Program-made: the position numbers and the translations under genes
Source of the DNA: Heterodontus francisci
Taxonomy: Eukaryota
Length of the DNA: 64,000 bases
NCBI RefSeq assembly: GCF_036365525.1
Contig: NC_090387.1
Location: forward strand, 76,073,300-76,137,299
Direction: 5' to 3'
The notes under the pieces: generated by a model
Told to the model about the DNA's origin: nothing
What the model saw: the letters and a program-made list of their open reading frames with translations, nothing else
Databases searched by the model: none
Shown: piece by piece, positions 172 through 58,866 of the stretch
Layout: the number at the start of each line of letters is the position of its first letter
Numbering within the stretch: the stretch's first letter is position 1

Positions 172-364
172 GTGAGTAACTGGCGGTTTTAATGTATTGG
201 ACGGCTGGGCGCGGACCTCTGTACAAAATTCTATACAGCTAGGCGTATGTGTACTTTAAAACTAGAAGAGCAAGAAACTGTAAATAGGTTCCCCATTATT
301 GAACACTGTGTGGGGCTGAGTACCCACGTTACCCCGAGTAATTTGCGTTGGGAAGTGGTGCAGT

Positions 365-785
365 GTATCTTTTAGATGGTGCACACTGTTGCCAGTGTGT
401 GCCATTGGTGGAGGGACTAAATGTTTAAGGTGATGGATGGAGTGTTGATGAAGCGGGCTGCTTTGTCCTGGGTAGTGTTTGGAACTGCACTCATCCAAAC
501 AAATGGAGAGTATTCCATCACACTTCTGACTTGTGCCTTGTATATGGAGGACAGGCTGTGGGGAGTCAGGAGGTGAGTTACTCGTTGCAGAATTCCCAAC
601 CTCTGACCTGCTCTTGTAGTCACAGTATAAATATGGCTGGTCCAGTTAAGTTTCTGGGCAATTGTAACCCCCAGGATGTGGATAGTGGGGGATTCAGCGA
701 TGGCTGTTGAACATCTTGGGAAAGTTGGTTAAATTCCCTCTTGTTGGAGATGGTCATTACCTGGCACTTGTATGGCGCAAACATA
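365..785 (-). mobile_element. Fragment of the tRNA-headed LINE family (C-terminal ORF region)
   Basis: Translates to TTRAGQRLGILQRVTHLLTPHSLSSIYKAQVRSVMEYSP, matching 43605-44156. Confidence 0.85.
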
Positions 786-6264: not shown

Positions 6265-7075
6265 TTTTTTTTGTTTGCTCATGGTATCTGGGCATTGCGA
6301 GGCCACATTTATTGCCATCCCTAATTGGTGGTGGGGAGCTGCCTTCTTGAACCACTGCCGTCCTTGTGTAGATGTACTGTTGGGAAGGGAGTTCCATGAT
6401 TTTGATCCAGTGACAGTGAAGGAATGGTGTTCCTGCCCTTGTCCTTCTAGGTGGTAAAGGCTGCAGAGTTATTGAAGGAGCCGTGGCACATTTCTGCAGA
6501 GCATCTTGTAGATGGTACCCACTGATGCCACTCTGGGAATGAGTGTCTTAAGATGGTGGGTGGGATGCCTATCAAACGGGCTGCTTTGTCTTGGATGATG
6601 TGGAGCTTCTTGAGTGTTGGAGCTGCAGTCATTCAGGCAAGTGGAAGATATTCCATCACACTCCTGACATGTGCCTTGTAGATGCTGGACAGGCTTTGAG
6701 GAGTCGGGGGTGAGTTATTCGCCACAGAATTCCCAGCCTCTGACCTTTTCCAGTTAAATTTCTGGTCAATGGTAACCCCCAGGATGTTGATGGGGGATTT
6801 GGCGATGGTAATTCTGTTGAACATCGAGTGGGGGGATAGTTAGATTCTCTCGGAGATTATTATTGCCTGGCACTTGTGTGGCATGAATGTAACTTGCCAC
6901 ATAACAGCCCAAGCCTTAATGTTGTCCAGGTCTTGCTGCATGCAGACATGAACTGTTTCAGTATCTGAGGAGTTGTGAATGGTACTGAACAGTGCAATCG
7001 TCAATGAACATTCCAACCTGACTTGATGTTGGAGGGAAGGTCATTGAGGGAGCTGAAGATGGTTGGGCCGAGACT
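6265..7075 (-). mobile_element. 5'-truncated copy of the tRNA-headed LINE family
   Basis: PINILGVTIDQK, SSIYKAHVRSVMEY, LKKLHIIQDKAARLIG; same 3' tail as 44145-44218. Confidence 0.85.
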
Positions 7076-15082: not shown

Positions 15083-16025
<943 letters not shown>

Positions 16026-24887: not shown

Positions 24888-27800
24888 GCTGGTTTTGGGG
24901 GAGGTGGGACCAGTACAAACTGGACAGGTTACACCTGGGCAGGACTGGGACTGATGTCCTAGGGGGAGTATTTGCTAGAGTGGTTGGGGAGGGTTTAAAC
25001 TAAAATGGAAGGGGGATGGGAACCTTTGCAAGGAGTCAGAGGAGGGGGGAGTCCAAGACGAGAACAAAAGCCAGCAAGGGGAATAAGAAAAGTGATAGGC
25101 AGAGAAATCAAGGTCCAGAATCAAACCGGACCACAGTGAAAAATAGTGGAAAGGGGACAAGTAAGGTTAAAAAGACTAGCCTTAAGGCTTTGTGCCTTCA
25201 CGCGTGGAGCATTCGCCATTAAGTGGATGAATTAATTGCGCAAATAGATGTAAAGTGGTATGATATAGTCGGGATTACGCAGACATGGCTGCAAGGTGAC
25301 CAGGGGTGGGAAATGAACATCCAGGGTATTCAGTATTTATGAAGGACAGACAAAAAGCAAAAGGCGGTGGAGTTGCATTGCTGGTTAAAGAGGAAATTAA
25401 CGCAATAGTGAGGAAAAATATTAGCTCTGATGATGTGGAATCTTATGGGTAGAGCTGAGAAAGACTAAGGGGCAAAAAACGTTAGTGGGGGTTGTATATA
25501 GACCCCCAAACTGTAGTGGTGATGTTGGGAATGGCATTGAACCGGAAATTAGAGACGCATGCAATAAAAGAACATCCATAATTATGGATGACTTTAATCT
25601 GCATATAGAATGGGCAAATCAAAATAGTCACAATACCGTAGAGGGGAAATTCTTGGAGTGTATACGGGATGGTTTTCTGCACCAATACGTTGAGGAACCA
25701 ACTAGAGAACAGGCCATCCTAGACTGGGTATCGTGTAATGAGAGAGGAATAATTGACAGTCTAGTAGTGCGAGACCCCTTGGGGACGAGCGACCATAATA
25801 TGATAGAATTTTTCAAGATGGAGAGTGACTTAATTGATTGAGACAAGGGTCCTGAATCTTAGTAAAGGAAACTAGGAAGGTACGAGGCGCGAGTTGGCCA
25901 TGACAGATTGGGAAACGTTACTTAAAGGGATGACGGTGGACAGGTAATGGCAAACATTTAAAGAGTGCATGGATGAACTGCAACAATTGTTTATCCCTGT
26001 CTGGCACAAAAGTAAAACGGGAAAGGTAGCCAAACCATGGCTTACAAGGGAAATCAGAGATAGCATTAGATCCAAGGAAGAGGCATATAAATTTGCCAGA
26101 AAAAACAATAGACCTGAGGATTGGGAGCAGTTTAGAATTCAGCAAAGGAGGATCAAGGGATTGATTAAGAAGGGGAAAATAGAGTATGAGAGCAAGCTTG
26201 CAGGGAACATAAAAACTGACTGTAAAAGTTTCTATAGGTATGTGAACAGAAAAAGATTGGTGAAGACAAATGTAGATCCCTTACAGTCAGAAATGGGAGT
26301 TTATTATGAGGAACAAAGAAATGGCTGACCAGCTAAATGCATACTTTTGTTCTGTCTTCACAAAGGAGGACACAAATATCATACCAGAAATGTTGGGGAA
26401 CACGGGGCTTAGTGAGAGAGAGGAACTGAAGGAAATCAGTATTGGTAGCGAAATGGTCTTGGGGAAATTGATGGGATTGAAGGCCGATAAATCCCCAGGG
26501 CCTGATGGTATGCATCCCAGAGTACTTAAGGAAATGCCCTAGAAATAGTGGATGCATTGGTGGTCTTCCAAGATTCTATAGACTCTGGAACAGTTCTTAC
26601 AGATTGGAAGGGAGCTAATGTAACCCCACTATTTAAAAAGGGAGGTAGAGAGAAAGCAGGGAATTAGAGACCAGTCAGCCTGACGTCGGTTGTGGGGAAA
26701 ATTCTAGAGTCCATTATCAAAGATTTTATAGCAGTGGTAGAATCGGGAAGAGTCAGCATGGATTTACAAAAGGGAAATCATGCTTGACAAATCTACTAGA
26801 ATTCTTCGAGGATGTAACTAGTAGAGTTGATGAGGGGGAGCCAGTGGATGTGGCTTATTTGGATTTTCAGAAGGCTTTTGACAAAGTCCCACATAAGAGA
26901 TTAGCGTGTAAAATTCAAGCACATGGGATTGGGGGTAGTGTATTGCGATGGATAGAAAATTGGATGGCAGACAGGAAACAGTCGGGATAAATGGGTCTTT
27001 TTCCGAATGGCAGACAGTGACTAGTGGGTGGGATCGGTGCTAGAACCCCAGCTATTCACAATATATATTAATGATTTAGATGAGTGAACTAAATGTAGTA
27101 TCTCCAGATTTGCAGATGAGACAAAACTGAGTGGGACAGTGAGTTGTGAGGAGGATGCAGAGAGGCTTCAGGGTGATTTGGACAAGTTGAGTGAGTGGGT
27201 AGATGCAGTATAATGTGAACAAATGTGAGGTTATCCACTTTGGTAGCAAAAACAGGAAGGCAGGTTATTATCTAGCTATAAACTGAGAGGGGAATATGCA
27301 GCGCGACCTAGGTAAGCATGTAGGTGCAACAGGCGATTAAAAAAAATTGCAAATGGTATGTTGGCCTTCATAGTGAGAGGACTTGAGTACAGGCACAGGG
27401 ATGTCTTGCTGCAATTATACAGGGCCTTGGTGAGGCCACACCTGGAATGTTGTGTGCAGTTTTGGTCTCCTTATCTGAGGAAGGATGTTCTTGCTACAGA
27501 GGGAGTGCAGCGAAGGTTTACCAGACTGATTCCTGGGATGGTGGGAGTGAATTATGAGGAGAGATTGAGTCGGTTAGGATTATATTTGCTGGAATTCAGA
27601 AGAGTGAGGGGGGATCTCATAGAAACCTATAAAATTCTAACAGTACTTGACAGGGTAGATGCAGGGAGGATGTTTCTGATGGTGGGGGAGTCCAGAACCA
27701 GGGGTCATAGTCTAAGAATATGGGGTAAACCTTTCAGGACTGAGATGAGGAGAAATTACTTCACCCAGAGAGTGGTGAGCCTGTGGAATTCGCTACCACA

Positions 27801-28409
27801 AAGCAGTTGAGGCCAAAACATTGTATGTTTTCAAGAAGGAGTTAGATATCACTCTTGGGTCTAAAGGAATCAAAGGGTATGGGGCGAAAGAGAGAACAGG
27901 TTACTGAGTTGGATGATCAGCCATGATCATAATGAATGGCGGAGGAGGCTCGAAGGGCCGAATGGCCTACTCCTGCCCCTGTTTTCTATGTTTCTATGAT
28001 GAGCAGTCTATATCCTTAGCCGATGAGATTTAAGGTTGAGGAAAGGAACGAACGACTGATGTGGGTGAATTAAATTCAATTCAAGTGCCGAAAGGAAAAT
28101 AAAGACTGCATTGAGAGAAGCGACAGATATTAAAAATCTAGAATTTGCTACTTGCAAGAGTGGTGCATAATTTAAATTGTTCCCTTTCTAGGCTGGAGAG
28201 ATTGATTGCCATTGCATTAACAATTATTCCAAATTAAAAGCATACTTGAGCTTTTAAGCATGAGCCCTAACTTTCTGCGACAAGGTTGTGAAAAATAACA
28301 GGATGTTGAGGGTGATCTGCCGCTTGTGAAAGGCAAATGGCTCAGCGGTCTGAAGTGACCAGCTCGTGTCTCTAATTTTCTGCCTGATTTGTGAATTAAG
28401 ACAATAAGG

Positions 28410-37320: not shown

Positions 37321-37568
37321 GATGTACAGTTCAAAAACAAGGAATTTAGCAAAACCTTTCTAAATCACTGGTGAAGCCTCAGCTGGAGCACTGTGTTCAA
37401 TTCTGGGCACCACACTTTAGGAAAGATGTCAAGGCCTTCGAAAGCATGCAAAGGAAATTTACTGAAATGGTATCAGGAATGAGCGACTTCAATTATGTCG
37501 GGGAGACTATAGATTCTACGATTGTTCTCTCTAGAGCAGAGAACGTTAAGGGGAGATTTAATAGAGGT
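37321..37568 (+). mobile_element. Old CR1 3' fragment, part 1 (continues at 40721-40980 and 44219-44290)
   Basis: KPQLEHCVQFWAPHFRKD...; collinear continuation after the two nested insertions. Confidence 0.8.
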
Positions 37569-40500
37569 CACAGAGTCATAGTCATAGAGTTATACAGCAC
37601 AGAAACAGGCCCTTTGGCTCATCGTGTCTGCGCCGGCCATACAGCACCCAACTGTTCTAATCCCATATTCCTGCACTTGACCCGCAGCACTGTATGCTAT
37701 GGCGTTTCAAGTACTCATTTAAATACTTCTTAAATGTTGTGAGGATTCCTGCCTCCACCACCTCTTCAGGTAGTGCGTTCCAGATTCCAACCACCCTCTG
37801 GTGAAAAAATGTTTCCTCAAATCCCACCTAAACCTCCTGCCCCTTACCCAAAATCTATGCCCCCTGGTTATTGACCCCTCCACTAAGGGAAAACGTTTCT
37901 TCCTATCTAACCTATCAATACCCCTCATAATCTTGTACACCTCAATCATGTCCCCCCTCAGCCTTCTCTTCTCCAAGGAATATAACCCTAGCCTTTTCAG
38001 TCTCTCTTCATAGCCGAAATGCTCCAGCCCAGGCAACATCCTGGTGAATCTCCTTTGCACCCTCTCCAGTACAATCACAACCTTCCTATAGTGTGGTGAC
38101 CAGAACTGTACACAGTACTCCAGCTGTGGCCTAACTTGTATTTTATACGGCTCCATCATAACCTCCCTGCTCTTATATTCTATGCCTCGACTAATAAAGG
38201 CAAGTATCCCATATGCTTTCATAACCACCTTATCTACCTGTACTGCTGTCTTCAGTGATCTTTGGACAAGTACACCAAGGTCCTTCTGACTTTCTGTACT
38301 TCCTAGGGTCCTACCATCCATTGTGTATTCCCTTGCCTTGTTAGTCCTCCCAAAATGCATTACCTCACACATTTCAGGATTAAATTCCATTTGCCACTGC
38401 TCCGCCCATTTTACCAGCCCATCTATATCTCCCTGTAATCTAAGGATTTCCTCCTCACTATTTACAACATCACCAATTTTCGTGTCATCTGCGAACTTAC
38501 TGATCATACCTCCTATATTCACATCTAAATCATTAATGTACACTACCAACAGCAAGGGTCCCAGCACTGATCCCTGTGGTACACCACTGGTCATAGGCTT
38601 CCAATCGCAAAAACAGCCCTCAACCATTACCCTCTGCCTCCTGCCACTTAACCAATTTTGGATCCAATTTGCCAAATTGCCCCGGATCCCATGGGCTCTT
38701 ACCTTCTTAACCAATCTCCCATGTGGGACCTTATCAAAAGCCTTACTGAAATCCATGTATACTACATCAACTGCTTTACCCTCATCGACACATCTAGCCA
38801 CCTCATCAAAAAATTCAATCAAGTTAGTTAGACATGATCTCCCGCTATCAAAGCCATGCTGACCATCCCTGATTAATCCCTGCCTCTCCAAGTGGAGATT
38901 AATCCTGTCCCTCAGACTTTTTCCAATATTTTCCCAACCACTGATGTTAGTCTCACCGGCCTGTAATTACCTGGTTTATCCCTACTACCCTTCTTGAATA
39001 ATGGTACCACATTCACTGTCTTCCAGTCCTCTGGTATCTCTCCTGTGGCCAGAGAGGATTTGAAAATTTGTGTCAAAGCCCCTGTTATCTCCTCCCTTGC
39101 CTCACATAACAGCCTGGGATACATCTCATCTGGACCTGAGGATTTATCCACTTTTAAGCCCGCTAAAACAGCTAATATTTCCTCCCTTTCAATGCTAATA
39201 TGTTCAAGTATATCACAATCCCCCTCCCTGATCTCTACACCTACATTGTCCTTCTCCATAGTGAACACTGATGAAAAGTAATCATTTAAAACCTCACCTA
39301 TGTCCTCCAGCTCCACACAAAGATTGCCACTTTGGTCCCTAATGGGCGCTACTGTTTCCCTGGTTATCCTCTTACCCTTAATATACTTATAAAACGTCTT
39401 GGGATTTTCCTTTATCTTGCCCGCCAGTGTTTTTTCATGCCCCCTCTTCGCTCTCCTAATTACTTTTTCAAGTGCCACCCTACACTTTCTATACTCCTCG
39501 AATGCCTCCATTGTTTTCAGTGCTTGGGATCCGCCGTAAGTCTCCTTTTTTTTCCTGATCCAATTCTCTATATCCCTTGACATCCAGGGTTCCCTGGGCC
39601 TGTTAGTCCTACCCTTCACCTTAACGGATACATGTTGGCTCTGAACTCTCACTATTTTCTCTTTGAATGGCTCCCACTGATGTGATGTAGACTTTGCTAC
39701 AAGTCGCTGCTCCCAGTCTACTTTGGCCAGATGCTGTTTTATCATATTGAAATCAGCCTTCCCCCAATTCAGTACGTTTATTTCTGGTCCATCTTTGCCC
39801 TTTTCCATAACTAGCTTAAATCTTAAATGGTCACGATCCCCGAAATGCTCCCCCACTGACACTTCTACCACTTGACTGGCTTCATTCCCTAGGATTAGGT
39901 CCAGTACTGCCCCTTCTCTTGTAGGACTTTCTACGTACTGGCTCAAAAAGCTCTCCTGTATGCATTTTAAGAATTCTGCCCCTTTTAAGCCTTTTGCACT
40001 AAGACTATCCAGTTAATATTGGGGAAGTTGAAATCCCCTACTATTATTACCCTATTATTTTTACACCTCTCTGAGATTTGCCTACATATCTGCTCCTCTA
40101 TCTCTTCCTTACTATTTGGAGGTCTGTTGTAGACACCCAGCCAAGTGATTGCCCCCTTTTTGTTTTAAGTTCTACGCATATGGCCTCATTTGAGGAACCT
40201 TCTAAGACGTCATCCCTCCTTACTGCAGTAATTGACTCCTTGATCAACAGTGCAATGCCACCTCCTCTTTTATCCCCTCCCCTGTCGCGCCTGAAGATTC
40301 TATACCCTGGAATATTGAGCTGCTGGTCCTATCCCTCCCTCAACCATGTCTCTGTGATCGCAATAATATCATAATCCCATGTGCTAATCAATACCCTCAA
40401 TTCATCTGCCTTACTAGTAAGACTCCTTGCATTGAAATAGATGCAATCCAACCTTGCATTTTTCCCTTGTGCCTTACCAGGTCTATATTTGCTCTGCCTT

Positions 40501-40720
40501 CCAGGCAGACTCACTTTCAGTTCTATATTACCCACTACTGTACCTCAACTCTGTATCCCATCCCCCTGCCAAATCAGGGGACTCCTGTACTACCTACCTG
40601 CAACTATTACTCCGCCTGGTGGTCACCCATCACTTTTCTGCCTGTACTGCCATTACCTGCGATGTGACTACCTCTCTAAATGTGCTATCCATGAGGTCCT
40701 CAGCATCATGGATGCTCCAC
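37569..40720 (-). mobile_element. CR1 LINE (ORF2 in three to four pieces, internally deleted ORF1 remnant)
   Basis: 390-aa RT and 344-aa EN/linker frames; FNARSL and TETW endonuclease motifs. Confidence 0.95.
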
Positions 40721-40980
40721 AGGTGTTCAGAATTATGAAAGGTTTTGATAGAGTAAATCAGGAGAAGCTGTTTTCACTGGTGGTTGGGTCGGTATCCAGG
40801 GGACAGAGATTTAAAATAATTGTCAAATAATCAGGGAAGATGAGGATATTTTTAATGCAGCCTGCTGTTGTGATCTGGAATGCACTGCCTGAAAGGGTGG
40901 TGGAAGCAGATTCAGTAGAAACTTTCAAAAAGGATATATATACTTGAAATGAAAAAAATGTAGGGCTATTGGTAAATGTG

Positions 40981-43900
40981 GGGAGGCAGTGGCGTCGTGG
41001 TATTGTCGCTGGACTAGTAATCCAGAGACCCAGGGTATTGCTCTGGGGACATGGGTTCAAATCCCACCACAGCAGAAGGTGGAATTTGAATTCAATTAAT
41101 AAATCTGGAATTTAAAAAAAGCTAGTCTAATGATGGCCAAGAAACCATTGTTGATTGTTGTAAAAATCCATCTGGATCACTAATGTCCTTTAGGGAAGGA
41201 AATCTGCTGTCCTTACCTGGTCTGGCCTACATGTGACTCCAGACCCACAACAATGTGGTTGACTCTTACATGCCCTCAGAAATGGCCTAGCAAGCTACTC
41301 AGCTGTATCAAACCACTACGAAGTCAATAAAAAGGAATGAAACCAGATGGACCAACTGGCATCGACCTAGGCACTGGAAATGACAATGGCAAACCCAGCC
41401 TGGTCGACCCTGCAAAGTCCTCCTTATTAACATCTGGGGGCTTGTGCCAAAGCTGGGACAGCTGTCCCACAGACTAGTCAAGGAACAGCCTGACATAGTC
41501 ATACTCACGGAATCATACCTGACAGACAATGTCCCAGACTCTGCCATCACCATCCCCGGGTATGTCCTGTCCCACTGGCAGGACAGAACCCAGCAGAGGT
41601 GGCAGCACAGTGGTATACAGTCGGGAGGGAGTTGCCCTGGGAGTCCTCAACATCGACTCTGGACCCCATGAAGTCTCATGGCAGCAGGTCAAACATGAAC
41701 AAGGAAACCTCCTGCTGATTACCACCTACTGCCCTCCCTCAGCTGATGAGTCAGTACTCCTCCATGATAAACAACACTTGGAGGAAGCACTGAGGTTGGC
41801 AAGGGCACAGAATATACTCTGGGTGAGGAACGTCAATGTCCATCACCAAGAGAGGCTTGGTTGCACCACTACTGACCGAGCTGGCCGAGTCCTAGAGGAC
41901 ATATTTGCTAGAATGGGTAAGCAGCAGGTGGTGAGGGAACAACAAGAGGCGAAAACATACTTGACCTCTTCCTCATCAATCTGCCTGCCGCAGTTGCATC
42001 TGTCCATGACAGTATTGGTAGGAGTGACCACCGTACAGTCGTTGTGGAGCCAAAGTCCTGCCTTTACATTGAGAATACCCTCCTTCGTGTTGTGTGGCAC
42101 TACCACCGTGCTAAATGGGATAGATTTCAAACAGATCGAGCAATGCAAAACTGGGCACCCAGGAGGCGCTGTGGGCCATCAGCAGCAGCAGAATTGTACT
42201 CAACCACAATATGTAACCTCATGGCCCAGCATATCCCCCACTCTACCATTACCATCAAGCCAGAAGACCAATCCTGGTTCAATGAAGAGTGCAGGAGGGC
42301 AATGAGGTGTCAACCTGGTGAAGCTACAACACAGGACTATCTGCATGCCAAACTGCATAAGCAGCATGCAATAGACAGAGTTAAGCAATCCCATAACCAA
42401 CGGATCAGATCTAAGCTCTGCAGTCCTGCCACATCCAGCCATGAATGGTGGTGGACAATTAAACAACTAACTGGAGGAGATGGGGGAGCCCAGCACATCA
42501 GTGCAAAAGATAAGGCTGAAGCATTTGCAACAATCTTCAGCCAGAAGTGTCGAGTTGATGATCCATCTCGGCCTCCTCCTGAAGTCCCCAGCATCACAGA
42601 TGCCAGACTTCAGCCAATTCGATTCACACTGCGTGATATCAAGAAACAACTGAAGACACAGGATACTGCAAAGACTATGGGCCCTGACAATTTGCTGGCA
42701 ATAGTATTGAAGACCTGTGCTCCAGAACTTGCCACACCCCTAGCCAAGCTGTTTCAGTACAGCTACAACACTGGCATCTACCTTGCAATGTGGAAACTTA
42801 CCCAGGTATGTCCTGTACACAAAAAGCAGGACAAGTCCAACCCGGCCAATTACCGCCCCATCAGCCTACTCTCAATCATCAGTAAAGTGATGGAAGGTGT
42901 CATCAACAGTGCTATCAAGCAGCACTTGCTTAGCAATAACCTGCTCAGTGATGCTCAGTTTGGATTCCGCCAGGGCCACTCAGCTCCTGACCTCATTACA
43001 GCCTTGGTTCAAACATGCACAAAAGAGCTGAACTCAAGAGATGAGGGGAGAGTGAGTGCCCTTGACATCAAGGCAGCATTTGACAAAGTATGGCATCAAG
43101 GCACCCTAGCAAAACTGAGGTCAATGGGAATCAGGGGGAAAATCCTCTGCTGGCTGGAGTCATACCTAGTGCAAAGGAAGATGGTTGTGATTGTTGGAGG
43201 TCAATCATCTGAGCTCCAGGACATCACTGCAGGAGTTACTCAGGGTAGTGTCCTGGGCCCAACCATCTTCAGCTGCTTCATCAATGACCTTCCTTCAATC
43301 ATAAGGTCAGAAGTGGGGATGTTTGCTGACGATTGCACAATGTTCAGCACCATTTGTGACTCCTCAGATACTGAACCAGTCCGTCTATAAATGCAGCAAG
43401 ACTTGGATAATATCCAGGCTTGGGCTGATAAGTGGCAAGTAACATTCATGCCACACAATTGCCAGGCAAAGATCATCTCCAACAAGAGATTCTAACCATC
43501 TCCCCTTGACATTCAACGGCATTACCATCGCTGAATCCCCCACTATCAACATCCTAGGAGCTACCATTGACTAGAAACTGAACTGGAGTAGCCATATAAA
43601 TACCGTGGCTACAAGAGCAGGTCAGAGGCTAGGAATCCTGTGGCGCGTAACTCACCTCCTGACTCCCCAAAGCCTGTCCACCATCTACAAGGCACAAGTC
43701 AGGAGTGTGATGGAATACTCTCCACATGCTTGGATGGGTGCAGCTCCAACAACACTCAAGAAGCTCGACACCATCCAGGACAAAGCAGCCCGCTTGATTG
43801 GCACCACATCTACAAACATTCACTCCCTCCACCACCGATGCACTGTGACAGCAGTGTGTACCATCTACAAGATGCACTGCAGCAATGCACCAATGCTCCT

Positions 43901-44218
43901 TAGACAGCACCTTCCAAACCCGCGACCTCTACCAACTAGAAGGACAAGGGCAGCAAATGCATGGGAACAGCAGCACCCGCAAGTTCCCCTCCAAGTCACA
44001 CACCAACCTGATTTGGAACTATATCGCCGTTACTTCACTGTTGCTGGGTCAAAATCCTGGAACTCCCTCCCAAACAGCACTGTGGGTGTACCTACCCCAC
44101 ATGGACTGCAGCGGTTCAAGAAGGCAGCTCACCACCACCTTCTCAAGGGTAATTAGGGATGATCAACAAATTCTGGCCTGGCCAGCGACGCCCACATCCC
44201 ATGAATGAATAAAAAAAA
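40981..44218 (+). mobile_element. Full-length tRNA-headed single-ORF (APE-RT) LINE, CR1/L2 group, disrupted copy
   Basis: A box 40990-41000, B box 41054-41064; ORF about 41380-44156 with NIWGL, ILTES, YCPPS, SDH, NYRPISL, QGSVLGP, FADD; A-rich tail. Confidence 0.92.
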
Positions 44219-44399
44219 GTCGGCGAGTGGGCCTAATTAGATAGTAATTTCAAAGGGCCAGCACAGACACCATGGGCTTCGTTCTTGCTGTAGGGTTCTA
44301 TGAATCTATGAAATTTACTTAATATCTTGTGGACAGAATGTAAAATTTCTTGCTTTTCCCCCGCCTCTTTTTGGAACATGAAGAACATTGTCACCCTAC

Positions 44400-46679: not shown

Positions 46680-47154
46680 CTTTAATGGAGAGAAAAAAAA
46701 AAGATTTTTTAAATTTAAAGGAACACATTCCCAGTTTTCTACTCTTATGCTGTTACAGCCCTACGGTTACAACAGTTATCGTTGCTGTCGTTTTTTAAAC
46801 TTTATGTTTGCATTTATCTTATAAATCGTTGTACAGCGCACAGCAAATTGACGAACTGTATTACAAACGATGCACAAAGAGGAGGAATCTCCAAGGGCTG
46901 GTTACATTCAGGGAAGCAGACGCCACTGCTCTGAATGGAAGTATCAGATCCTGGCCCGGGATTGGGGTTTACAGTAATGATCCCAAGTGAGATTCCTGTC
47001 CCACTATATTGGAGTGAGCGTAAACCAGTTCACACGAACAGCGGAATCGACTCTCGTTATTCCGTAAGAATCATTGCCGTACTGAACATTTTGTTTGTTT
47101 ATTTCAAAATTGGTCGTTTTCGAATATTCCACATATTTCAAAACATATTTTCTT

Positions 47155-48228
47155 TTATTGGCAAGATGGATACAGAACTGGCTCGGTCATAGAAGACAGA
47201 GGGTATCAGTGGATGGGTGTTTTTCTGAATGGATGGATGTGACTAGTGGTGTTCCGCAGGGATCAGTGCTGGGACCTTTGCTGTTTGTAGTAAATATAAA
47301 TGATTTGGAGGAAAATGTAGCTGGGCTGATTAGTAAGTTTGTGGATGACACCAAGGTTGGTGGAGTTGCGGATAATGATGAGGATTGTCAGAGGATACAG
47401 CAGGATATAGATCGGTTGGAGACTTGGGCGGAGAAATGGCAGATGGAGTTTAATCCGGACAAATGTGGGGTAATGCATTTTGGAAGGTCTAATGCAGGTG
47501 GGAGGTATACAGTAAATGGCAGAACCCTTAGGATTATTGACAGGTGGAGAGATCTGGGCATACAGGTCCACAGGTCACTGAAAGTGGCAACGCAGGTGGA
47601 TCAGGTAGTCAAGAAGGCATACGGCATGCTTGCCTTCATCGGTCGGGGCATAGAGTATAAAAATTGGCAAGTCATGTTGCAGCTGTACAGAACCTTAGTT
47701 AGGCCACACTTAGAATATTGCGTGCAATTCTGGTCGCCACACTACCAGAAGGACGTGGAGGCTTTGGAGAGGGTACAGAGGAGGTTTACCAGGATGTTGC
47801 CTGGTCTGGAGGGCATTAGCTATGAGGAGAGGTTGGAAAAACTCGGATTTTTTTCACTGGAACGACGGAGGTGGAGGGGCGACATGACAGAGGTTTACCA
47901 AGTTATGAGCGGCATGGACAGAGTGGATAGTCAGAAGCTTTTTCCCAGGGTGGAAGAGTCAGTTACTGGGGAACATAGGTTTGAGGTGCGAGGGGCAAAG
48001 TTTAGAAGGGATGTGCGAGGCAGGTTTTTTACACAGAGGGTTGTGAGTGCCTGGAACATGCTGCCAGGGGAGGTGGTGGAAGCAGATACGATAGCGACGT
48101 TTAAGAGAAATCTTGGCAAATACATGAATAGGAAGGGAATAGAGGGATATGGGCCCCGGAAGTGCAGAAGGTGTTAGTTTAGGCAGGCATCAAGATCAAG
48201 AATGGCCTGTACTGTTCTTTGTTCTTTG
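47155..48228 (+). mobile_element. 5'-truncated young CR1 LINE (uninterrupted ORF2 C-terminal third)
   Basis: Open frame to 48177 with QGSVLGP and FVDD; (TTCTTTG)n tail. Confidence 0.95.
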
Positions 48229-49983
48229 GTTAATATTGAAAAGATGATGTGTGTAATCAAAATATCTCTGATGTCGATATTGAATCCAGACAGGATGTTT
48301 TTATATGTATAGATTAGAATCCGTGCATTACAACATTTCAACGTCTATGGTGGAGATTTCAGATCGTGCAGCTTTCACCTAAGGAACTTTCTCCAGAGGG
48401 GGAACCGAGGGCTGAAACGTTTTTCACCTTATGAAAGGGTTATATTGGTAATTATATATCAATGTGTAGATCCATACAGAAGAGGGAAACTGAATGGGAA
48501 ATCCTAACTCCGAGTGCATGTTTTATATAATTCCAGGGGTTGCGCCCTTCCCCAAGTTCATTCGGCCTGTTTAACACGTTTTGCCTGGATTCTGCTTATA
48601 TCAGTCCTACATTTACCATTTACTAATACGAACCTGTGTCCGCTCGATCTACAGTCACTGTTTAGCTGGAAAGACAGGCCGTTTATTAGGTTTGCATTGT
48701 TTTGCCAATTTATTACCATCTCCTTAACATTTTTTCTTTCCACATTTACTTTTCCGACGTTGTAGTAATAGAAAATGATTAAATTAGGGACATTATTAAC
48801 TTGCAAAATTATATTAGCCTTTATTTCAAACAAAGGCTCAGAATTCCTCTATTCTTTTACCATGGATTTGCTTTAGAGATAATATGCAATGCAGTAGAAT
48901 TTCAGTGGAGGAAGCCGGTGCTTTTTTGATCTCCCGCCGTAATTTCGTGTGGGGTTTGGGGAGTGTAAATAGAAATCATGAATGACAAATACGGAGCCCA
49001 GGCGTTTATACAAATGCTCGGTGATATCCTTCCAGTATTTGACGGGTTGAGAGTATGTAAAAAAAGTCCACTTGGCGTACGACAGAGGTTCAAACACGGG
49101 CATTGGGTAGCTTCACTGTTCAGCAAGCTGGAGGACTTGGGCTGGAATCCAGTATTGAGGGCAAGATCAACACCTCCCTTCTCACTGAATTGGAGGATTC
49201 ATTTGTGAAAAGAGTTTGGTAGCTCAAGCAAGTCATCAGTGGACACAGGTGCACAGCATAAATTGCGGACATAGGAACAGAGAGAACATGCAGCCCCTCG
49301 AGCTTGCTGTGCCATTCATTTATATTATGGTTGATTTGCACATTAACTCCATTTTCCCAAATTAATTCATTTCTCTTGATACGCACACCTAACAAAAACT
49401 ATCCACCTCAAATATCGGACAATTTGGTATAGAAAGTATTAAATAGGCAATTTTGAGCAGTGGACAGTTATCTGGTGCGAGAAATATTCAGGGCGGTAGT
49501 AGGAAAGTGTTCATCTGAGCTTGTAACGAGTCACCTTGTTGGGGTAGGTTATTTGGTCTTTTATGTTGTATAAAAGACTGGACCTAAGAGGTGTTAAAAT
49601 TGTTCCCATTGTTGCACTTTGGCACCGTTATTTTGGTGAGAAGGAACCTTATCCTATCGATTAATTTCAAACTAAGGTTTAAATATTTGTTTTCACTCTC
49701 TTGGCTTAATAACAATTGTAACTACACCAAAAGCACTCATTGGGTGAAAAACACTTTGGAATGCTCTGAGGACAACGAGAGGGTGAAATTGGTCTTTACG
49801 CAGTAGCGCAAAACTGGCGATAGCGAATCGGCGGTCGTTGTACTCCGGGGTCAGTGGAAAAGAAAATCCCGAGATGAGTAAAACGAATTTGTTATCAGCA
49901 AGTTTTCTTCCAGTGATAAAAGTGAAATTCCATATATTGCACACAGCTGAAAAAGTCCCACTCCCTGGTACAATGACACTTAC

Positions 49984-54289: not shown

Positions 54290-57200
54290 TTTGTTTTCAC
54301 TGGAGTGCTGACTTGGGTTGCACTAGAGTGTTAAAGTGGAAGTTTGGTGACTGAGGATAAATAAGGGTTAATTTTATCTTAAGTCTAGTCTGTCTTTTAT
54401 TTAGCAGATTAACTTAACAGTTGCTGTTTGGGTTGGAGAAGGTGAGTTTTAGACCAGCTTTAAACAGAGTTCACTCAGGCACTGCTTGCAGCTGCACCTT
54501 GTTAATTAGAGAATTGGCTTAAACCAGTTTTCAGGGGCTAGAGTCAGTCAGTATAAAAATGGGCCATCTTACAGTGCTGACCTTGTTTGTACTGGAGTGC
54601 TGACTTAGGTTGCATTACAGTGTTAAAGTGGAAGTTTGGTGACTGAGGAAGTTCGGTGAGGAGGGAGCGAGGAGCTCCTTTCATTTCCTACCTGTCCCCA
54701 GAGTGACGGGAGCTGAGAGTCTCCAAAGAGCACAGCTGACTGGTGAGTAAGTCCTGGTGGGTATTTTTCAAAGTGGATTGAATTGCAAGTCATTATTTTA
54801 GCAAGACTTAGTTGTTTTTTAAAAATTATAATCTTCTAAAGTTTTAAATTTAAAGGGTTTAGTCATGGCAGGAGAGCTTGCAGCCGTGGTTTGCTCCTCT
54901 TGCTGCATGTGCGAAACCGGGAACATTTCCAGTCCCTGGGACCAGCATGTGTGCAGGAAGTGTGTCCAGCTGCAGCTCCTGGAAGCTCGGGTTTCAGAGC
55001 TGGAATGGTGGCTGGAAACACTGTGGAGCATCCGCGAGTCTGAGAGCATTGTGGATAGCACGTATAGAGAGGTGGTCACACCACAGCTGAAGGGACTTGA
55101 GGAAGGAAGGGAATGGGTGACCACCAGGCAGTCCAAGAGAATCAGGAAGGTAGTTCAGGAGTCCCCTGGAGTCCCACTTGCAAATCAGTATTCTATTTTG
55201 GAGGCTGATGAGGCTGGTTCCTCCAGGGAGAGTGGACAGAGCCAAGCTTCTGGCACCACAAGCAGCCTGTCTGCACAGGAAGGGGGAAAGAGAGGAAGAG
55301 CAATAGTAATAGGGGATTCTATAGTCAGGGGAACAGATAGGTGCTACTGTGGCCGTCAACGTGACTCCAGGATGGAGTGTTGCCTCCCTGGTGCCAGGGT
55401 CAGGGATGTCACTGAACGGCTGCAGGGCATCCTGAAAGGGGAGGGTGACAAGGCAGAGGTCATGGTACATGTTGGTACCAATGACATAGGCAGAAAGAGG
55501 GATGAGGTCTTGCATCAAGAATTCAGGGAGTTAGGCAGTAGACTAAAAAGCAGGACCTCTCGGGTTGTAATCTCTGGATTACTTCCAATGCCACGTGCTA
55601 GCGAGTATAGAAATAGGAGAATAGCACAGATGAACGCGTGGCTTAAGAGTTGGTGCAGGAGGGAGGGTTTTAGATTCCGGGACCACTGGGACCGTTTCTG
55701 GGGAAGGTGGGACCTGTACAAGCAGGACGGTCTACATCTGCACCAGACGGGGACTAACATCCTTGCTGGCGGGTTTGCTAGTGCTGTTCGGAGGAGTTTA
55801 AACAAATTTGGCAGGGGGAGGAGATGCAGACTCCTAGCAGAATAGGAACACAGCTAAACACAGGAAAGCGAACAGGTCAGAGGGAATACAGCGGAAGTAA
55901 GTTTCAAGGGAGTAAAACCAGGATGGAAGGCCTCTGCTTGAATGCCAGGAGTATTGCAGGTAAAACGGATGGGTTAAGGGCAATGATTGACACGTGGAAT
56001 TGTGATATAGTAGCCATCACGGTGACATGGTTGAGGGAGGGGCAGGATTGGCAGTTCAATATCCCGGGATATAGAATCTTCAGGCGAGACAGAGGAGGGG
56101 GTATTGCAATATTAGTTAAGCAGTCAGTTACTGCAGTGAGGAGAGATGATATCTTGGAGGGGGCATCAAATGCAGCTTTATGGGTAGAGTTTGGGAATAA
56201 AAAAGGGGCAGCCACATTGCTAGGTGTTTATTATAGACCCCCAGATAGTCAGCGGGAAATTGAGGAGCAAATATGTGCGCAATTTGCAGAGGTGTGTAAA
56301 AATAATAGGGTAATTATATTAGGTGATTTCAACTTTCCCAACATTAATTGGGATAGTCATCGTGTTAAGGGCTTAGATGGAGTGGAGCTTTTTAAATGCA
56401 TACAGGAGAACTTTTTAGCTCAATATGTAGAGGATCCAACAAGGGAGGGTGCAGTGCTGGACCTAATTCTGGGAAATGAAGCCGGACAGGTGGTTGATGT
56501 GTTGGTGGGGGAGCATTTTGGTGATAGTGACTACAACATGGTACAATTTAAGCTTGTTATGGAGAAAGAAATAGACAAGTTGTAAAAAAAGGTTTTGGAT
56601 TGGGAGACAGTGAATTTTAGTAAAATAAGGCAGGATCTGGCCAAGGTAGACTGGAAAGAGTTATTTGTCGGGAAATCTACAGAAGAGCAGTTGGGGGAGG
56701 GGGGGGGGGGGGGGGTGGGGTGGTGGTGGCGTGGGTGGCATTCAAAAAGGAAATGGGGAGGGTACAGGCCCAACATGTTCCCTCTAGGGTAATAGTTGGA
56801 GCAACAAGCCCAGAGAACCATGGATGACCAGAAACATTCAGGGTACGATGAGAAGGAAAAGAGAGGCTTTTAGCAAATACAAGGAGAGCAAATCAATGGA
56901 AGCATTAGTGGAGTACAGAAAGTGTAGGATGGAGATTAAGAAAGCACTTAGGAGAGCAAAGAGGGAATATGAGAAAACTCTGGCTGGTAAAAGTAGGGAA
57001 AATCCCAAGATATTCTAAAAGTATATCAGTGGGAAGAAGATAACCAGGGAAAGAGTAGGACCCATTAGAGACCAAGGGGGAAATGTGTGGCTGGAGCCAG
57101 AGGACATTGGTAGGGTGTTGAACGAATACTTCACATCTGTCTTCACCCAAGGGAAAGAGGATGTAGATATGGAACTTAGAGAGAGAGACTGTGAGGTTCT

Positions 57201-58866
57201 TGAGCAATTTGTCATAGGATGTGACAAGGTATTGGAGGTTTTGGAAGGCTTAAAAGTAGACAAATTTCCAGGTCCAGACGATTTGTGTCCCAGGATGCTG
57301 TGGGAGGTGAGGGTGGAGATTGCAAGGGCTCTGACCCGAATTTTTAATTCCCCTCTGGCCACGGGGGAGGTGCCAGAGAACTGGAGAACAGCTAATGTGG
57401 TCCCACTATTTAAGAAAGGTTGTAGAGATAAGCCAGGGAACTACAGACCAGTGAGTCTCACGTCACTGGTAGGGAAACTATTAGAGAAAATTATGAAGGA
57501 GAGAATCTATCACCACTTGGAGAGGCAACATTTGATTAGGAATAGTCAGCATGGCTTTGTCAGAGGGAGGTCATGCCTAACAAATTTGATTGAATTTTTT
57601 GAGCATGTGACCAGGTGTGTAGATGAGGGTAGTGCAGTTGATGTAGTTCACATGGATTTCAGCAAAGCCTTTGACAAGGTCCCACATGGGAGACTTATCA
57701 AGAAAACAAATGCACATGGGATACAAGGTAACTTGATAAGGTGGATTCAAAATTGGCTTAGCTGTAGGAGACAGAGAGTGATGACAGATGGCTGTTTTAG
57801 TGACTGGAAGCCAGTGTCCAGTGGCGTACCACAGGGATCTGTGCTGGGTCCCCTATTGTTTGTCATTTATATAAACGACATAGATGACTATCTGGGGGGG
57901 GGGGGGGGGGGGGGTGGGGCAGGATCAGTAAGTTCGCAGATGACACAAAGATTGGCCGAGTGGTTAACAGTGAGGTGTCTTGGGTTACAGGAAGATATAG
58001 ATGGGATGGTCAAATGGGCAGAAAAATGGCAGATGGAAGTTAACGCTGAAAAGTGTGAGGTGATACACTTTGGAAGGAGTAATGTGACATGGAAGTATTC
58101 AATGAATGGCCTGATCCTGGGAAGTTCCGAGGAACAAAGGGACCTTGGTGTGTTTGTCCATAGATCTCTGAAGGCAGAAGGGCAGGTTAATAGGGTGGTG
58201 AAAGAGGCTTATGGGACAATTGCCTTTATCAATCGAGGCATAGATTGCAAAAGCAGGAAGGTCATGTTGGAGTTGTACAGAACTTTGGTAAGGCCACAGC
58301 TGGAGTACTGTGTGCAATTCTGGCCACCACATTATAGGAAGGATGTGATTGCATTGGAGGGGGTGCAGAGGCGATTCACCAGGATGTTGCCTGGGATGGG
58401 ACATTTAAGCTATGAAGAGAGGTTGGAAAGGCTTGGATTGTTTTCACTGGAGCAGAGAAGACTGAGGGGTGACCTGATCGAGGTGTACAAGATTATGAAG
58501 GACATGGACAGGGTGGATAGGGAGAAGCTGTTCCCCTTAGTTAAAGGGTCAGTTATGAGGGGTCACAAGTTTAAGGTGAGGGGTGGGAGGTTTAAGGGGA
58601 ATTTGAGGAAGAACGTTTTTACCCAAAGGGTGGTGACGGTCTGGAATGTCCTGCCTGGGAGGGTGGTAGAGGCAGGTTGCCTCACATACTTTAAAAAGTA
58701 CCTGGATGAGGCACTTGGCACGTCATAACATTCAAGGCTATGGGCCAAGTGTTGGCAAATGGGATTAGGTAGACATGTCAGGTGTTTTAATGCTTCGGTG
58801 CAGACTCGATGGGCCGAAGGGCCTCTTCTGCACTGTATTATTCTGTGATTCTGTGATTTTTCTGTG
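54290..58866 (+). mobile_element. Near full-length CR1 LINE
   Basis: Duplicated 5'UTR segment (54299-54357 and 54591-54649), open ORF1, disrupted ORF2 (55824-58728), (TTCTGTGA)n tail. Confidence 0.96.
54865..55845 (+). CDS. CR1 ORF1p (CxxC-CxxC zinc finger, leucine zipper, SGNH/GDSL esterase)
   Basis: 326-aa open frame: CSSC...CRKC, LQLLEARVSELEWWL, IGDSIVR, HVGTND, DGLH. Confidence 0.85.
   Translation: MAGELAAVVCSSCCMCETGNISSPWDQHVCRKCVQLQLLEARVSELEWWLETLWSIRESESIVDSTYREVVTPQLKGLEEGREWVTTRQSKRIRKVVQESPGVPLANQYSILEADEAGSSRESGQSQASGTTSSLSAQEGGKRGRAIVIGDSIVRGTDRCYCGRQRDSRMECCLPGARVRDVTERLQGILKGEGDKAEVMVHVGTNDIGRKRDEVLHQEFRELGSRLKSRTSRVVISGLLPMPRASEYRNRRIAQMNAWLKSWCRREGFRFRDHWDRFWGRWDLYKQDGLHLHQTGTNILAGGFASAVRRSLNKFGRGRRCRLLAE

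What the first reader, a model, noticed from the sequence alone, without database searches (positions are those of the whole stretch)
40981..44218. Candidate RNA polymerase III-transcribed protein-coding LINE: tRNA-Thr head, no ORF1, no TTTT in 3.2 kb
Seen: the element starts with a tRNA-like unit. It has A box TGGCGTCGTGG (40990-41000), a perfect anticodon arm CTGGA-CTAGTAA-TCCAG (41009-41025, anticodon AGT = Thr), an enlarged variable hairpin, and a T-arm/B box GGTTCAAATCC (41054-41064). About 300 nt later a single APE-RT frame begins (ATG near 41380) with no ORF1. Scanning every line, I found no run of 4 or more T on the sense strand over 40981-44218, although A-runs occur. Ordinary CR1s in this window have many sense-strand T-runs (several in 47155-48228 alone). 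The two other family fragments (365-785, 6265-7075) and the derived SINE also lack sense-strand T4. Established: vertebrate Pol III uses internal A/B boxes and terminates at T4 or longer; LINEs are normally regarded as Pol II transcripts. Inference: the family is transcribed end to end by Pol III and has purged terminators from its coding sequence. That would require cap-independent translation, possibly via the conserved 41090-41380 leader. This copy has frameshifts and stops, so it is inactive.
Basis: partly seen in the sequence, partly recalled or inferred. Interest (0 to 1): 0.88.

Follow-up and report, generated by a model that had tools for sequence, protein, structure and literature searches.

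The report
Shark LINE with a tRNA-type head
A 3.2-kb protein-coding jumping gene in a shark genome starts with the tRNA-like promoter module normally found only on short non-coding SINEs, and it has no TTTT stop signal for RNA polymerase III anywhere along its length, so it may be the first LINE copied by that polymerase, though transcription itself was not tested.

Summary
Window 40981-44218 (+) is one retrotransposed unit inserted cleanly into an older repeat. It consists of:
- a tRNA-Thr(AGT)-like head with near-consensus A and B boxes;
- a leader of about 300 nt;
- a single broken APE-RT frame with no room for an ORF1;
- AATAAA plus an A-tail.

The sense strand has no T4 run.
- It is the longest TTTT-free stretch on either strand of the 64-kb window (3505 nt against 1282 nt for the next).
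- Under a synonymous-codon shuffle, 3.4 runs are expected (P=0.016). Only T runs are depleted.
- Seven other LINE fragments in the window have 8-13 T4 runs each, and none of 19 intact relatives has zero.

The SINE at 15281-16025 (-) is this element minus its ORF.

By its features the LINE fits the elasmobranch "Zenon" (CR1-group) elements. The papers I found on these do not mention a tRNA head. Related protein fragments are annotated in three shark species.

Pol III transcription and cap-independent translation remain inference, because no raw RNA reads or other genomic copies could be fetched.

First-stage readers of this scan noted the same architecture on other pieces of this genome (s1-871653, s1-871826, s1-872185). 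I could not check those notes.

The parts
40981..44218 (+). Full element: tRNA-type head, leader, single APE-RT frame, 3' UTR and A-tail. It inserted as one unit into an older repeat.
   Evidence: The flanks 40720-40980 and 44219-44330 align contiguously to another copy of the host repeat at 37560-37945 (-). There is no T4 run on the sense strand.
40981..40985 (+). Five-nt 5' leader (GGGAG) ahead of the tRNA-like +1. The same start (GGGAGGC) is seen in the SINE copy.
   Evidence: Sequence and alignment of the LINE and SINE 5' ends. It lies 9-10 nt upstream of the A box, where a type-2 Pol III start would be expected (inference).
40986..41074 (+). tRNA-Thr(AGT)-like head with a long variable arm.
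   Evidence: ARAGORN; cloverleaf-like minimum-free-energy fold. Rfam gives only a sub-threshold tmRNA/T-arm match at 41025-41069.
40990..41000 (+). A box TGGCGTCGTGG, one mismatch to TRGCNNAGTGG. The SINE copy has TGGCATAGTGG.
41054..41064 (+). B box GGTTCAAATCC.
   Evidence: It is the only A-box/B-box pair in the window and in the 80 relative loci by regex scan.
41075..41312 (+). Leader shared with the derived SINE.
   Evidence: 87% identical to window 15553-15370 (-). The SINE joint 41307->44115 is seen in contigs of runs X1, X15 and X16.
41313..41389 (+). LINE-specific part of the 5' UTR. It holds candidate start codons at 41337, 41380 and 41386, none in frame with the endonuclease in this copy.
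41390..44156 (+). Remains of the single ORF: endonuclease about 41390-42050, RT core 42824-43351, C-terminal domain to the TAG at 44154-44156. It is broken by frameshifts near 41580, 41957 and 43508. It carries in-frame stops at about 43388, 43494 and 43572. It also lacks about 30 nt relative to other copies at about 42301 and 42479.
   Evidence: blastx frame map; collinearity with 941-983-aa LINE proteins; Pfam; loose ends and inserted letters in read laying.
44115..44218 (+). 3' module shared with the SINE: the last 13 codons, a 54-nt 3' UTR, AATAAA at 44208-44213 and an A-run at 44211-44218.
   Evidence: Thousands of contigs diverge into unrelated A/T-rich flank just behind 44218.
44354..44357 (+). 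First TTTT downstream of the element, 136 nt into the flank. It is the candidate Pol III stop for this copy.
15281..16025 (-). SINE copy made of the head, the leader and the 3' module of the LINE. It is interrupted by a nested insertion of another SINE at about 15555-15890.
356..776 (-). 5'-truncated fragment of the same LINE family (77% identical to 43450-43884), with no sense-strand T4.
6265..7072 (-). 5'-truncated fragment of the same LINE family (71-75% identical to 43253-44218), with no sense-strand T4.

Best explanation
This is an inactive full-length copy of an elasmobranch poly-A, single-ORF LINE of the CR1 group (Zenon-like). Its own 5' end is a tRNA-derived module with an internal type-2 (A box/B box) promoter.

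Shown:
- The head, leader, ORF and A-tail inserted as one retrotransposed unit.
- The unit starts at the same nucleotide as the family's SINE, 5 nt upstream of the tRNA-like +1.
- The SINE is the LINE with 41308-44114 deleted.
- The sense strand specifically avoids T runs.

Inferred:
- Source copies are transcribed from the head by RNA polymerase III, as a SINE is. Transcription runs through a body kept free of T4 terminators and through the encoded A-tail, and stops at the first T-run in the flank.
- The uncapped RNA is translated without scanning, and the protein reverse-transcribes its own RNA, priming on the A-tail.
- Internal deletion then produced a SINE that keeps the promoter and the RT-recognition end.
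For: - Single-unit insertion with clean boundaries.
- tRNA call and A/B boxes.
- Identical 5' start GGGAGGC in the LINE and the SINE, 9-10 nt upstream of the A box and 5 nt upstream of the tRNA +1. This is what a primary Pol III transcript looks like, not an RNase P-cut end.
- No T4 in 3238 nt. It is the longest TTTT-free stretch in 128 kb of strand sequence, 2.7 times the next longest. Two of the next four longest stretches cover other fragments of this family.
- Under a synonymous-codon shuffle T4 is 0 against 3.4 expected (P=0.016), and T>=3 is 14 against 19.9 (P=0.015). A, C and G runs are normal.
- Seven other LINE segments of the same window have 8-13 T4 runs each, at or above expectation.
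- None of 19 intact relatives has zero T4, including poly-A-tailed relatives with the same T content. Only 1 of 19 reaches P<=0.05 in the same test.
- Phe is 2.2% of the protein against a median of 4.2% in 110 homologues, and TTA codons number 0.
- The SINE deletion joint 41307->44115 appears in contigs of three runs. Contigs bridging leader to ORF occur in a second organism (X15, 41071-41439) and in the source organism (X16, 41238-41825).
- First-reader notes report three more head-bearing copies of 3.1-3.3 kb on other pieces of this genome. I did not check them.
Against: - There is no direct evidence of transcription, polymerase or 5' chemistry. All runs were contigs.
- The T4 signal is modest on one decayed copy, and it disappears under a second-order Markov null (P=0.23).
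- From general knowledge, no Pol III transcript of 3 kb and no Pol III-made natural mRNA is known.
- A tRNA-like structure at the extreme 5' end, plus 12 upstream ATGs in the leader, would need an internal ribosome entry mechanism. The evidence for that is only a weak fold z-score of -2.2.
- Word depth over the head bin is about half that over the leader bins. This could mean that headless or 5'-truncated copies are common, although the tool warns that contig depth cannot rank parts.
- None of 45 distant relatives carries a tRNA, so the head is a lineage-specific acquisition.
Confidence: 0.5

Rival explanations
1. The head does belong to the LINE lineage, but the protein-coding RNA is an ordinary capped Pol II transcript. 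It would start from an internal promoter in the head or leader, since tRNA-type SINE modules can act as mobile Pol II promoters. In this reading the tRNA-like part serves another purpose (RNA stability, ribosome or RT recruitment) or is a relic. Pol III would make only short or abortive products and the SINE RNA. The lack of T runs would follow from C-rich codon usage and low Phe content.
For: - All LINEs studied so far, apart from rDNA-resident R2, are regarded as Pol II transcripts (general knowledge; Kojima 2018, PMC5786205, assumes this for bipartite LINEs).
- The T4 deficit is not significant once tri-nucleotide content is modelled.
- The element has an AATAAA signal at 44208-44213.
- Third codon positions are C-rich (31% C).
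Against: - The synonymous shuffle keeps codon usage and protein sequence and still gives P=0.016, for T runs only.
- Relatives with the same T and C content have normal T4 counts.
- A Pol II start at exactly the nucleotide used by the SINE would be a coincidence.
- Pol III bound to a near-consensus A/B head would in any case run into a body that has nothing to stop it.
Confidence: 0.3
2. Head-bearing LINE copies are recurrent dead-end chimeras. In this reading the true LINE masters are headless. The SINE arose as Kojima proposed, by adding a tRNA head to a bipartite 5'UTR+3'end derivative. During reverse transcription of LINE RNA the enzyme sometimes switches, within the homologous leader, onto abundant SINE RNA. 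That would produce head+leader+ORF copies like this one.
For: - Template switching and the bipartite LINE-to-SINE route are documented (PMC5786205; PMC6740152 discusses copy-choice for Zenon derivatives).
- The leader offers about 240 nt of homology.
- The head bin has lower word depth than the leader bins.
- I could verify only one head-bearing LINE copy myself.
Against: - It does not explain the T-run avoidance across the ORF.
- One deletion turns the LINE into the SINE, which is the simpler history. Lepidopteran Zenon repeatedly gives such deletion derivatives (PMC6740152).
- No strongly supported alternative upstream sequence appears between 41075 and 41390 among the loose ends listed by read laying, though only the best-supported rows are shown.
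- First readers noted at least three more head-bearing copies in about 14 Mb of this genome. These notes are unchecked.
Confidence: 0.15
3. The juxtaposition is a coincidence or an assembly artefact: a SINE happened to insert exactly at the 5' end of a LINE, or the assembly collapsed.
For: Sharks have very many SINE and LINE copies, and nested insertions are common. One is seen inside the SINE at 15555-15890.
Against: - A separately inserted SINE would carry its own 3' tail and A-run between the leader and the ORF. None is there.
- The host repeat is interrupted once, at 40980/44219.
- Contigs from other runs bridge the leader and the ORF.
Confidence: 0.03

Closest known systems
Zenon elements (CR1 group) of elasmobranchs, coelacanth and hagfish (GBE 2026, PMC13343379; 'CR1-Zenon like LINE' in the whale shark preprint 10.1101/443036)
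   Same: - Single APE-RT ORF, no ORF1 and a poly-A tail. The paper gives this combination as unique to Zenon within the CR1 group.
- Elasmobranch host.
- High conservation among sharks. The paper reports more than 84% identity between species consensuses. Here about half of this copy's 31-mers recur in other organisms' runs.
   Different: The paper contains no occurrence of 'tRNA' and does not describe a SINE-type head, a derived SINE or T-run avoidance. RT phylogeny against Zenon references could not be run here.
Persaeus, the short internally deleted element (SIDE) of lepidopteran Zenon (PMC6740152)
   Same: [quoted passage not shown] It reaches high copy number.
   Different: Persaeus and its Zenon have no tRNA, 5S or 7SL similarity and no Pol III promoter. 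Here both the LINE and its derivative carry one, so the derivative is at once a SIDE and a tRNA-SINE.
tRNA-derived SINEs (SINE2) with LINE-derived bodies and tails; Kojima's bipartite-LINE route to SINEs (PMC5786205)
   Same: - Head with A and B boxes, a body from a LINE 5' UTR and a tail from the LINE 3' end.
- No internal T4.
- The element starts at the presumed Pol III start.
[quoted passage not shown]
   Different: Here the head sits on the autonomous, protein-coding element itself. Kojima assumes the LINE partner is transcribed by Pol II and that the head is added only to the short derivative.
Alu/L1-type poly-A retrotransposition, and SINEs such as B2 that carry AATAAA (PMC8466645)
   Same: An encoded A-tail preceded by AATAAA. 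There is no terminator of its own at the 3' end, so a Pol III transcript would end in the flank.
   Different: Those are non-coding elements of a few hundred nt that depend on a separate LINE. This one encodes its own enzyme.
R2 elements (general knowledge, not tested here)
   Same: A precedent for a LINE that does not use Pol II. R2 is co-transcribed with rRNA by Pol I, self-cleaved, and its uncapped RNA is translated.
   Different: A different clade, endonuclease and polymerase. R2 has no promoter of its own.

Membership tests
APE-type non-LTR retrotransposon (LINE) | Reverse transcriptase domain | tested here: met
   Pfam RVT_1 at E=2.5e-29, 102.9 bits against a cutoff of 29.6. There are 142,684 HMMER hits with E up to 0.001.
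APE-type non-LTR retrotransposon (LINE) | N-terminal apurinic-type endonuclease | tested here: inconclusive
   Only sub-threshold Pfam matches on the frame-shifted pieces: Exo_endo_phos 0.055 and Exo_endo_phos_2 0.004-0.007. The pieces are collinear with the N-terminal 220 residues of full-length LINE proteins.
APE-type non-LTR retrotransposon (LINE) | Insertion as a discrete unit with a 3' A-tail or repeat; 5'-truncated copies exist | tested here: met
   Clean interruption of the host repeat, an A8 tail after AATAAA and two 5'-truncated fragments. Target-site duplication is not discernible.
Zenon (CR1 group) | No ORF1 | tested here: met
   Only about 400 nt lie between the 5' end and the endonuclease start, holding short uORFs only.
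Zenon (CR1 group) | Poly-A tail, unique among CR1-group elements according to PMC13343379 | tested here: met
   Contigs diverge into unrelated A-rich flank just behind 44218.
Zenon (CR1 group) | RT domain clusters with named Zenon references | not testable with these tools
   No Repbase or Dfam sequences are available. The nearest full-length protein (P0002, 44% identity) is unnamed.
tRNA-derived SINE (SINE2) | tRNA-derived head with A and B boxes at the extreme 5' end | tested here: met
tRNA-derived SINE (SINE2) | Short, non-coding and non-autonomous | tested here: not met
   The element is 3238 nt long and carries an APE-RT frame of about 920 codons. The SINE at 15281-16025 does meet this feature.
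RNA polymerase III type-2 transcription unit | Internal A and B boxes with the start about 10 nt upstream of the A box | tested here: met
   The boxes have one mismatch each to the consensus, and their starts are 64 nt apart. The element's 5' end lies 9-10 nt upstream of the A box. The start site itself is inferred from the retrotransposed copy.
RNA polymerase III type-2 transcription unit | No T4 or longer run between the start and the intended 3' end; a terminator downstream | tested here: met
   No T4 in 3238 nt. The first TTTT lies 136 nt into the flank.
RNA polymerase III type-2 transcription unit | Occupancy by TFIIIC/TFIIIB/Pol III, with a 5'-triphosphate transcript resistant to alpha-amanitin | not testable with these tools
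   Only assembled contigs were available.

The most novel reading that the evidence does not exclude
A family of autonomous retrotransposons in sharks is transcribed end to end by RNA polymerase III from a tRNA-derived internal promoter. It has purged T-run terminators from 3 kb of coding sequence, partly at the cost of Phe codons. Its uncapped RNA is translated by internal initiation. The family's SINE arose simply by deleting the ORF. This would reverse the usual picture of how SINEs acquire LINE parts.
Probability: 0.45. Interest if true: 0.92.

Novelty: new variant of a known kind. Interest (0 to 1): 0.78.

Why it matters
If the reading is true, it would have three consequences.
- It would be the first protein-coding retrotransposon, and one of the very few natural mRNAs, made by RNA polymerase III. 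That would extend by about tenfold the length of RNA this polymerase is known to make in vivo.
- It would give a concrete, testable route for the origin of SINEs: a tRNA-headed LINE loses its ORF. This contrasts with the accepted stepwise assembly from a tRNA, an anonymous body and a borrowed tail.
- It would explain why SINE bodies often match LINE 5' UTRs.

Even if Pol II makes the coding RNA, a LINE lineage that carries a SINE-type head at its 5' end is an undescribed architecture for the abundant elasmobranch Zenon-like elements. These elements make up a noticeable share of very large shark genomes.

Tried and rejected
I could not fetch genomic copies around the same-family proteins or around the closest full-length relative, P0002.
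- The metagenome scan returned only distant relatives (28-40% identity, one short segment at 50%). None has a tRNA or an A/B-box pair. I used them as controls only.
- Exact-pattern scans of viral contigs and genome contigs with a conserved leader 26-mer found nothing.
- The search of earlier findings by sequence was blank.
- Read laying could use only Logan contigs. It shows no starts, ends, strand or expression. No best-supported loose end was listed at the 5' boundary, so I could not count how many copies begin at the head.
- Rfam gave no tRNA-family hit above threshold, only a partial tmRNA/T-arm match and a sub-threshold mir-33-like hairpin on the opposite strand. I take the hairpin as chance.
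- Rejected: the head as an RNase P processing signal that trims read-through transcripts. Both the LINE and the SINE start 5 nt upstream of the tRNA +1.
- Rejected: T-run avoidance as a general property of poly-A-tailed or T-poor LINEs. Controls L015, L017 and L019 have poly-A tails, L017-L023 have T content of 0.19-0.25, and all have normal T4 counts.
- I did not build a family consensus or a repaired reading frame. The start codon of the family is therefore left open.
- No paper describing a tRNA-headed or Pol III-transcribed LINE was found in nine full-text searches. Repbase, Dfam and Ogiwara et al. 1999 (HE1/HER1) could not be consulted.
Full report
**What is there.**
- Window 40981-44218 (+) begins with GGGAG, followed by an 89-nt tRNA-like unit. 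ARAGORN calls it tRNA-Thr(AGT) at 40986-41074, and it is the only tRNA in the 64-kb window.
- Folded alone, the unit gives an acceptor-like stem, an anticodon arm, a long variable hairpin and a T arm.
- Rfam's tRNA model did not report it. Only a sub-threshold tmRNA/T-arm match appears.
- A leader of about 300 nt follows. From 41390 to the TAG at 44154-44156 the sequence is collinear with single-ORF LINE proteins of 941-983 aa, from about residue 6-25 to within 5 residues of their C-termini.
- Pfam finds RVT_1 (E=2.5e-29) and weak endonuclease matches on the frame-shifted pieces.
- There is no room for an ORF1.
- The element ends with a 54-nt 3' UTR, AATAAA (44208-44213) and an A8 run.

**How this copy is broken.**
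- There are three frameshifts, near 41580, 41957 and 43508.
- There are three in-frame stops, at about 43388, 43494 and 43572.
- Compared with other family members, about 30 nt are missing at about 42301 and at 42479.
- The ATGs at 41337, 41380 and 41386 are not in frame with the endonuclease in this copy.

**It moved as one unit.**
- The flanks 40720-40980 and 44219-44330 align contiguously with another copy of an older repeat at 37560-37945 (-). That repeat was therefore interrupted once by the whole 3.24-kb unit.
- A separately inserted SINE would have left its own tail and A-run between the leader and the ORF. None is present.
- No target-site duplication could be made out.

**Relation to the SINE.**
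- The element at 15281-16025 (-) matches LINE 40981-41115 (82%) and 41094-41279 (87%), and then the 3' 75-100 nt. It is interrupted by a nested insertion of a different SINE.
- The SINE starts with the same GGGAGGC.
- Contigs from three public runs carry the deletion joint 41307->44115, or 41310->44118.
- The SINE therefore equals the LINE minus 41308-44114. It retains the last 13 codons of the LINE ORF.
- One deletion of a head-bearing LINE is the simplest history.

**T runs.**
- The sense strand has 0 runs of T4 or longer, against 12 A4+, 11 C4+ and 6 G4+.
- Expected T4+ is 5.1 from base composition (P(0)=0.005), 2.4 under a first-order Markov model (P=0.09) and 1.5 under a second-order model (P=0.23). 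The higher-order models absorb the deficit of TT (112 against 146) and TTT (14 against 31), which is itself part of the signal.
- I took the reading frames from blastx and shuffled synonymous codons among positions. This keeps the protein and the codon usage. It gives 3.4 expected T4 runs (P(0)=0.016) and 19.9 expected T>=3 runs against 14 observed (P=0.015).
- A, C and G runs match the same null. With uniform synonymous usage, none of 3000 simulations had zero T4 runs.

**Controls for the T-run result.**
- Seven other LINE segments in the same window have 8-13 T4 runs each, at or above the iid expectation.
- Nineteen intact ORFs of relatives from metagenomes never have zero T4 runs. Those with comparable T content (0.19-0.25) have 4-12. 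Only 1 of 19 reaches P<=0.05 in the same test.
- Poly-A-tailed relatives behave normally, so poly-A priming does not explain the deficit.
- The protein has 2.2% Phe against a median of 4.2% in 110 homologues, which puts it in the lowest 1%. It uses no TTA codon.
- Over both strands of the window, the longest TTTT-free stretch is 40848-44353 (3505 nt). The next longest is 1282 nt. Two of the next four longest cover the two other fragments of this family.
- The first TTTT downstream lies 136 nt into the flank.

**Family and distribution.**
- HMMER against 1.8 billion representatives gave same-family fragments at 72-77% identity. They are annotated as uncharacterized proteins in Heptranchias perlo, Heterodontus francisci and Rhincodon typus. 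The family is therefore widespread in sharks.
- About half of this copy's sampled 31-mers recur in runs of several other coded organisms.
- More than 700,000 contigs per genome run lie on the element at 80% likeness or more.
- The closest full-length protein is unnamed, at 44% identity and 983 aa.
- A 2026 survey of CR1-group elements reports that elasmobranchs carry "Zenon" elements. It defines these by the absence of ORF1 and by a poly-A tail, a combination it calls unique in the group. [quoted passage not shown]
- This element fits those features. Its RT phylogeny could not be tested.
- Lepidopteran Zenon repeatedly gives internally deleted derivatives (Persaeus). Those explicitly lack any Pol III promoter (PMC6740152).
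[quoted passage not shown] He proposes that heads are added to bipartite LINE derivatives, with the LINE itself made by Pol II.
- I found no description of a tRNA-headed or Pol III-transcribed LINE. Repbase and Dfam were not available.

**How it most likely works.** Two things are shown.
- An RNA that started at the SINE start site and ran to the A-tail was reverse-transcribed and inserted.
- That start lies 9-10 nt upstream of the A box and 5 nt upstream of the tRNA +1. This is the look of an unprocessed Pol III primary transcript, and it argues against RNase P trimming of a read-through RNA.

The rest is inferred. A near-consensus A/B head that evidently drives the very successful SINE will also recruit Pol III on the LINE, and nothing in 3.2 kb would stop the polymerase. 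Full-length Pol III transcripts are therefore expected. The T-specific avoidance, which reaches down to amino-acid usage, suggests that such transcripts matter for propagation. Translation would have to bypass a structured 5' end and many upstream ATGs. The leader's fold is only mildly better than shuffles (z=-2.2).

I put this reading at about 0.5. The rivals are:
- a Pol II-made coding RNA with the head serving another role, about 0.3;
- recurrent LINE/SINE template-switch chimeras, about 0.15;
- coincidence or artefact, about 0.03.

**Limits.**
- Only one head-bearing LINE copy could be examined.
- The scan's first readers noted three more copies of 3.1-3.3 kb on other pieces of this genome, two of them also said to lack TTTT (s1-871653, s1-871826, s1-872185). 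I could not read those sequences.
- All sequencing runs were assembled contigs.
- Word depth over the head is about half that over the leader. This is unexplained, and by the tool's own warning it is not interpretable as copy number.
- I built no consensus and no repaired frame.

Noticed in passing
window 15555-15890 (-): The SINE copy of this family carries a nested insertion of about 340 nt from a different tRNA-type SINE (it begins GGGCAGCACAGTGGTTAGCACTGC... and ends in an AAATA-rich tail). Beside it, AAATCTGGAATT is duplicated in tandem.
   Followed up: partly
window 2564-3980 (-), 7927-10040 (+), 17200-20029 (-), 25259-27852 (+), 37666-40532 (-), 47095-48255 (+), 55824-58785 (+): Seven fragments of other LINE families are present. 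They are C-poor (13-15% C) and G-rich on the sense strand, unlike the C-rich tRNA-headed family, and T4 runs occur at or above expectation. About a third of the window is LINE-derived.
   Followed up: partly
window 43833-43895 (-): A sub-threshold Rfam match to the mir-33 precursor (34 bits against a gathering score of 50) lies on the antisense strand of the LINE ORF. It is probably a chance hairpin.
   Followed up: no
window 40954-41334 (read laying bins): Summed contig word depth over the tRNA head is about half that over the leader in all four runs. Possible causes are 5'-truncated or headless copies, other SINEs that share the leader, or faster CpG decay of the head.
   Followed up: no
L011:1023-4445: This metagenome LINE relative has a (CAT)n tail. 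It is the only control with a significant T4 deficit under the synonymous shuffle (20 against 31 expected). It has no tRNA.
   Followed up: no
window 40600-40980 and 44219-44330; 37560-37945 (-): The repeat that hosts the insertion has several diverged copies in the window (68-76% identical). It ends in the CAGCACAGAC...GGGC motif common to many shark repeats.
   Followed up: partly
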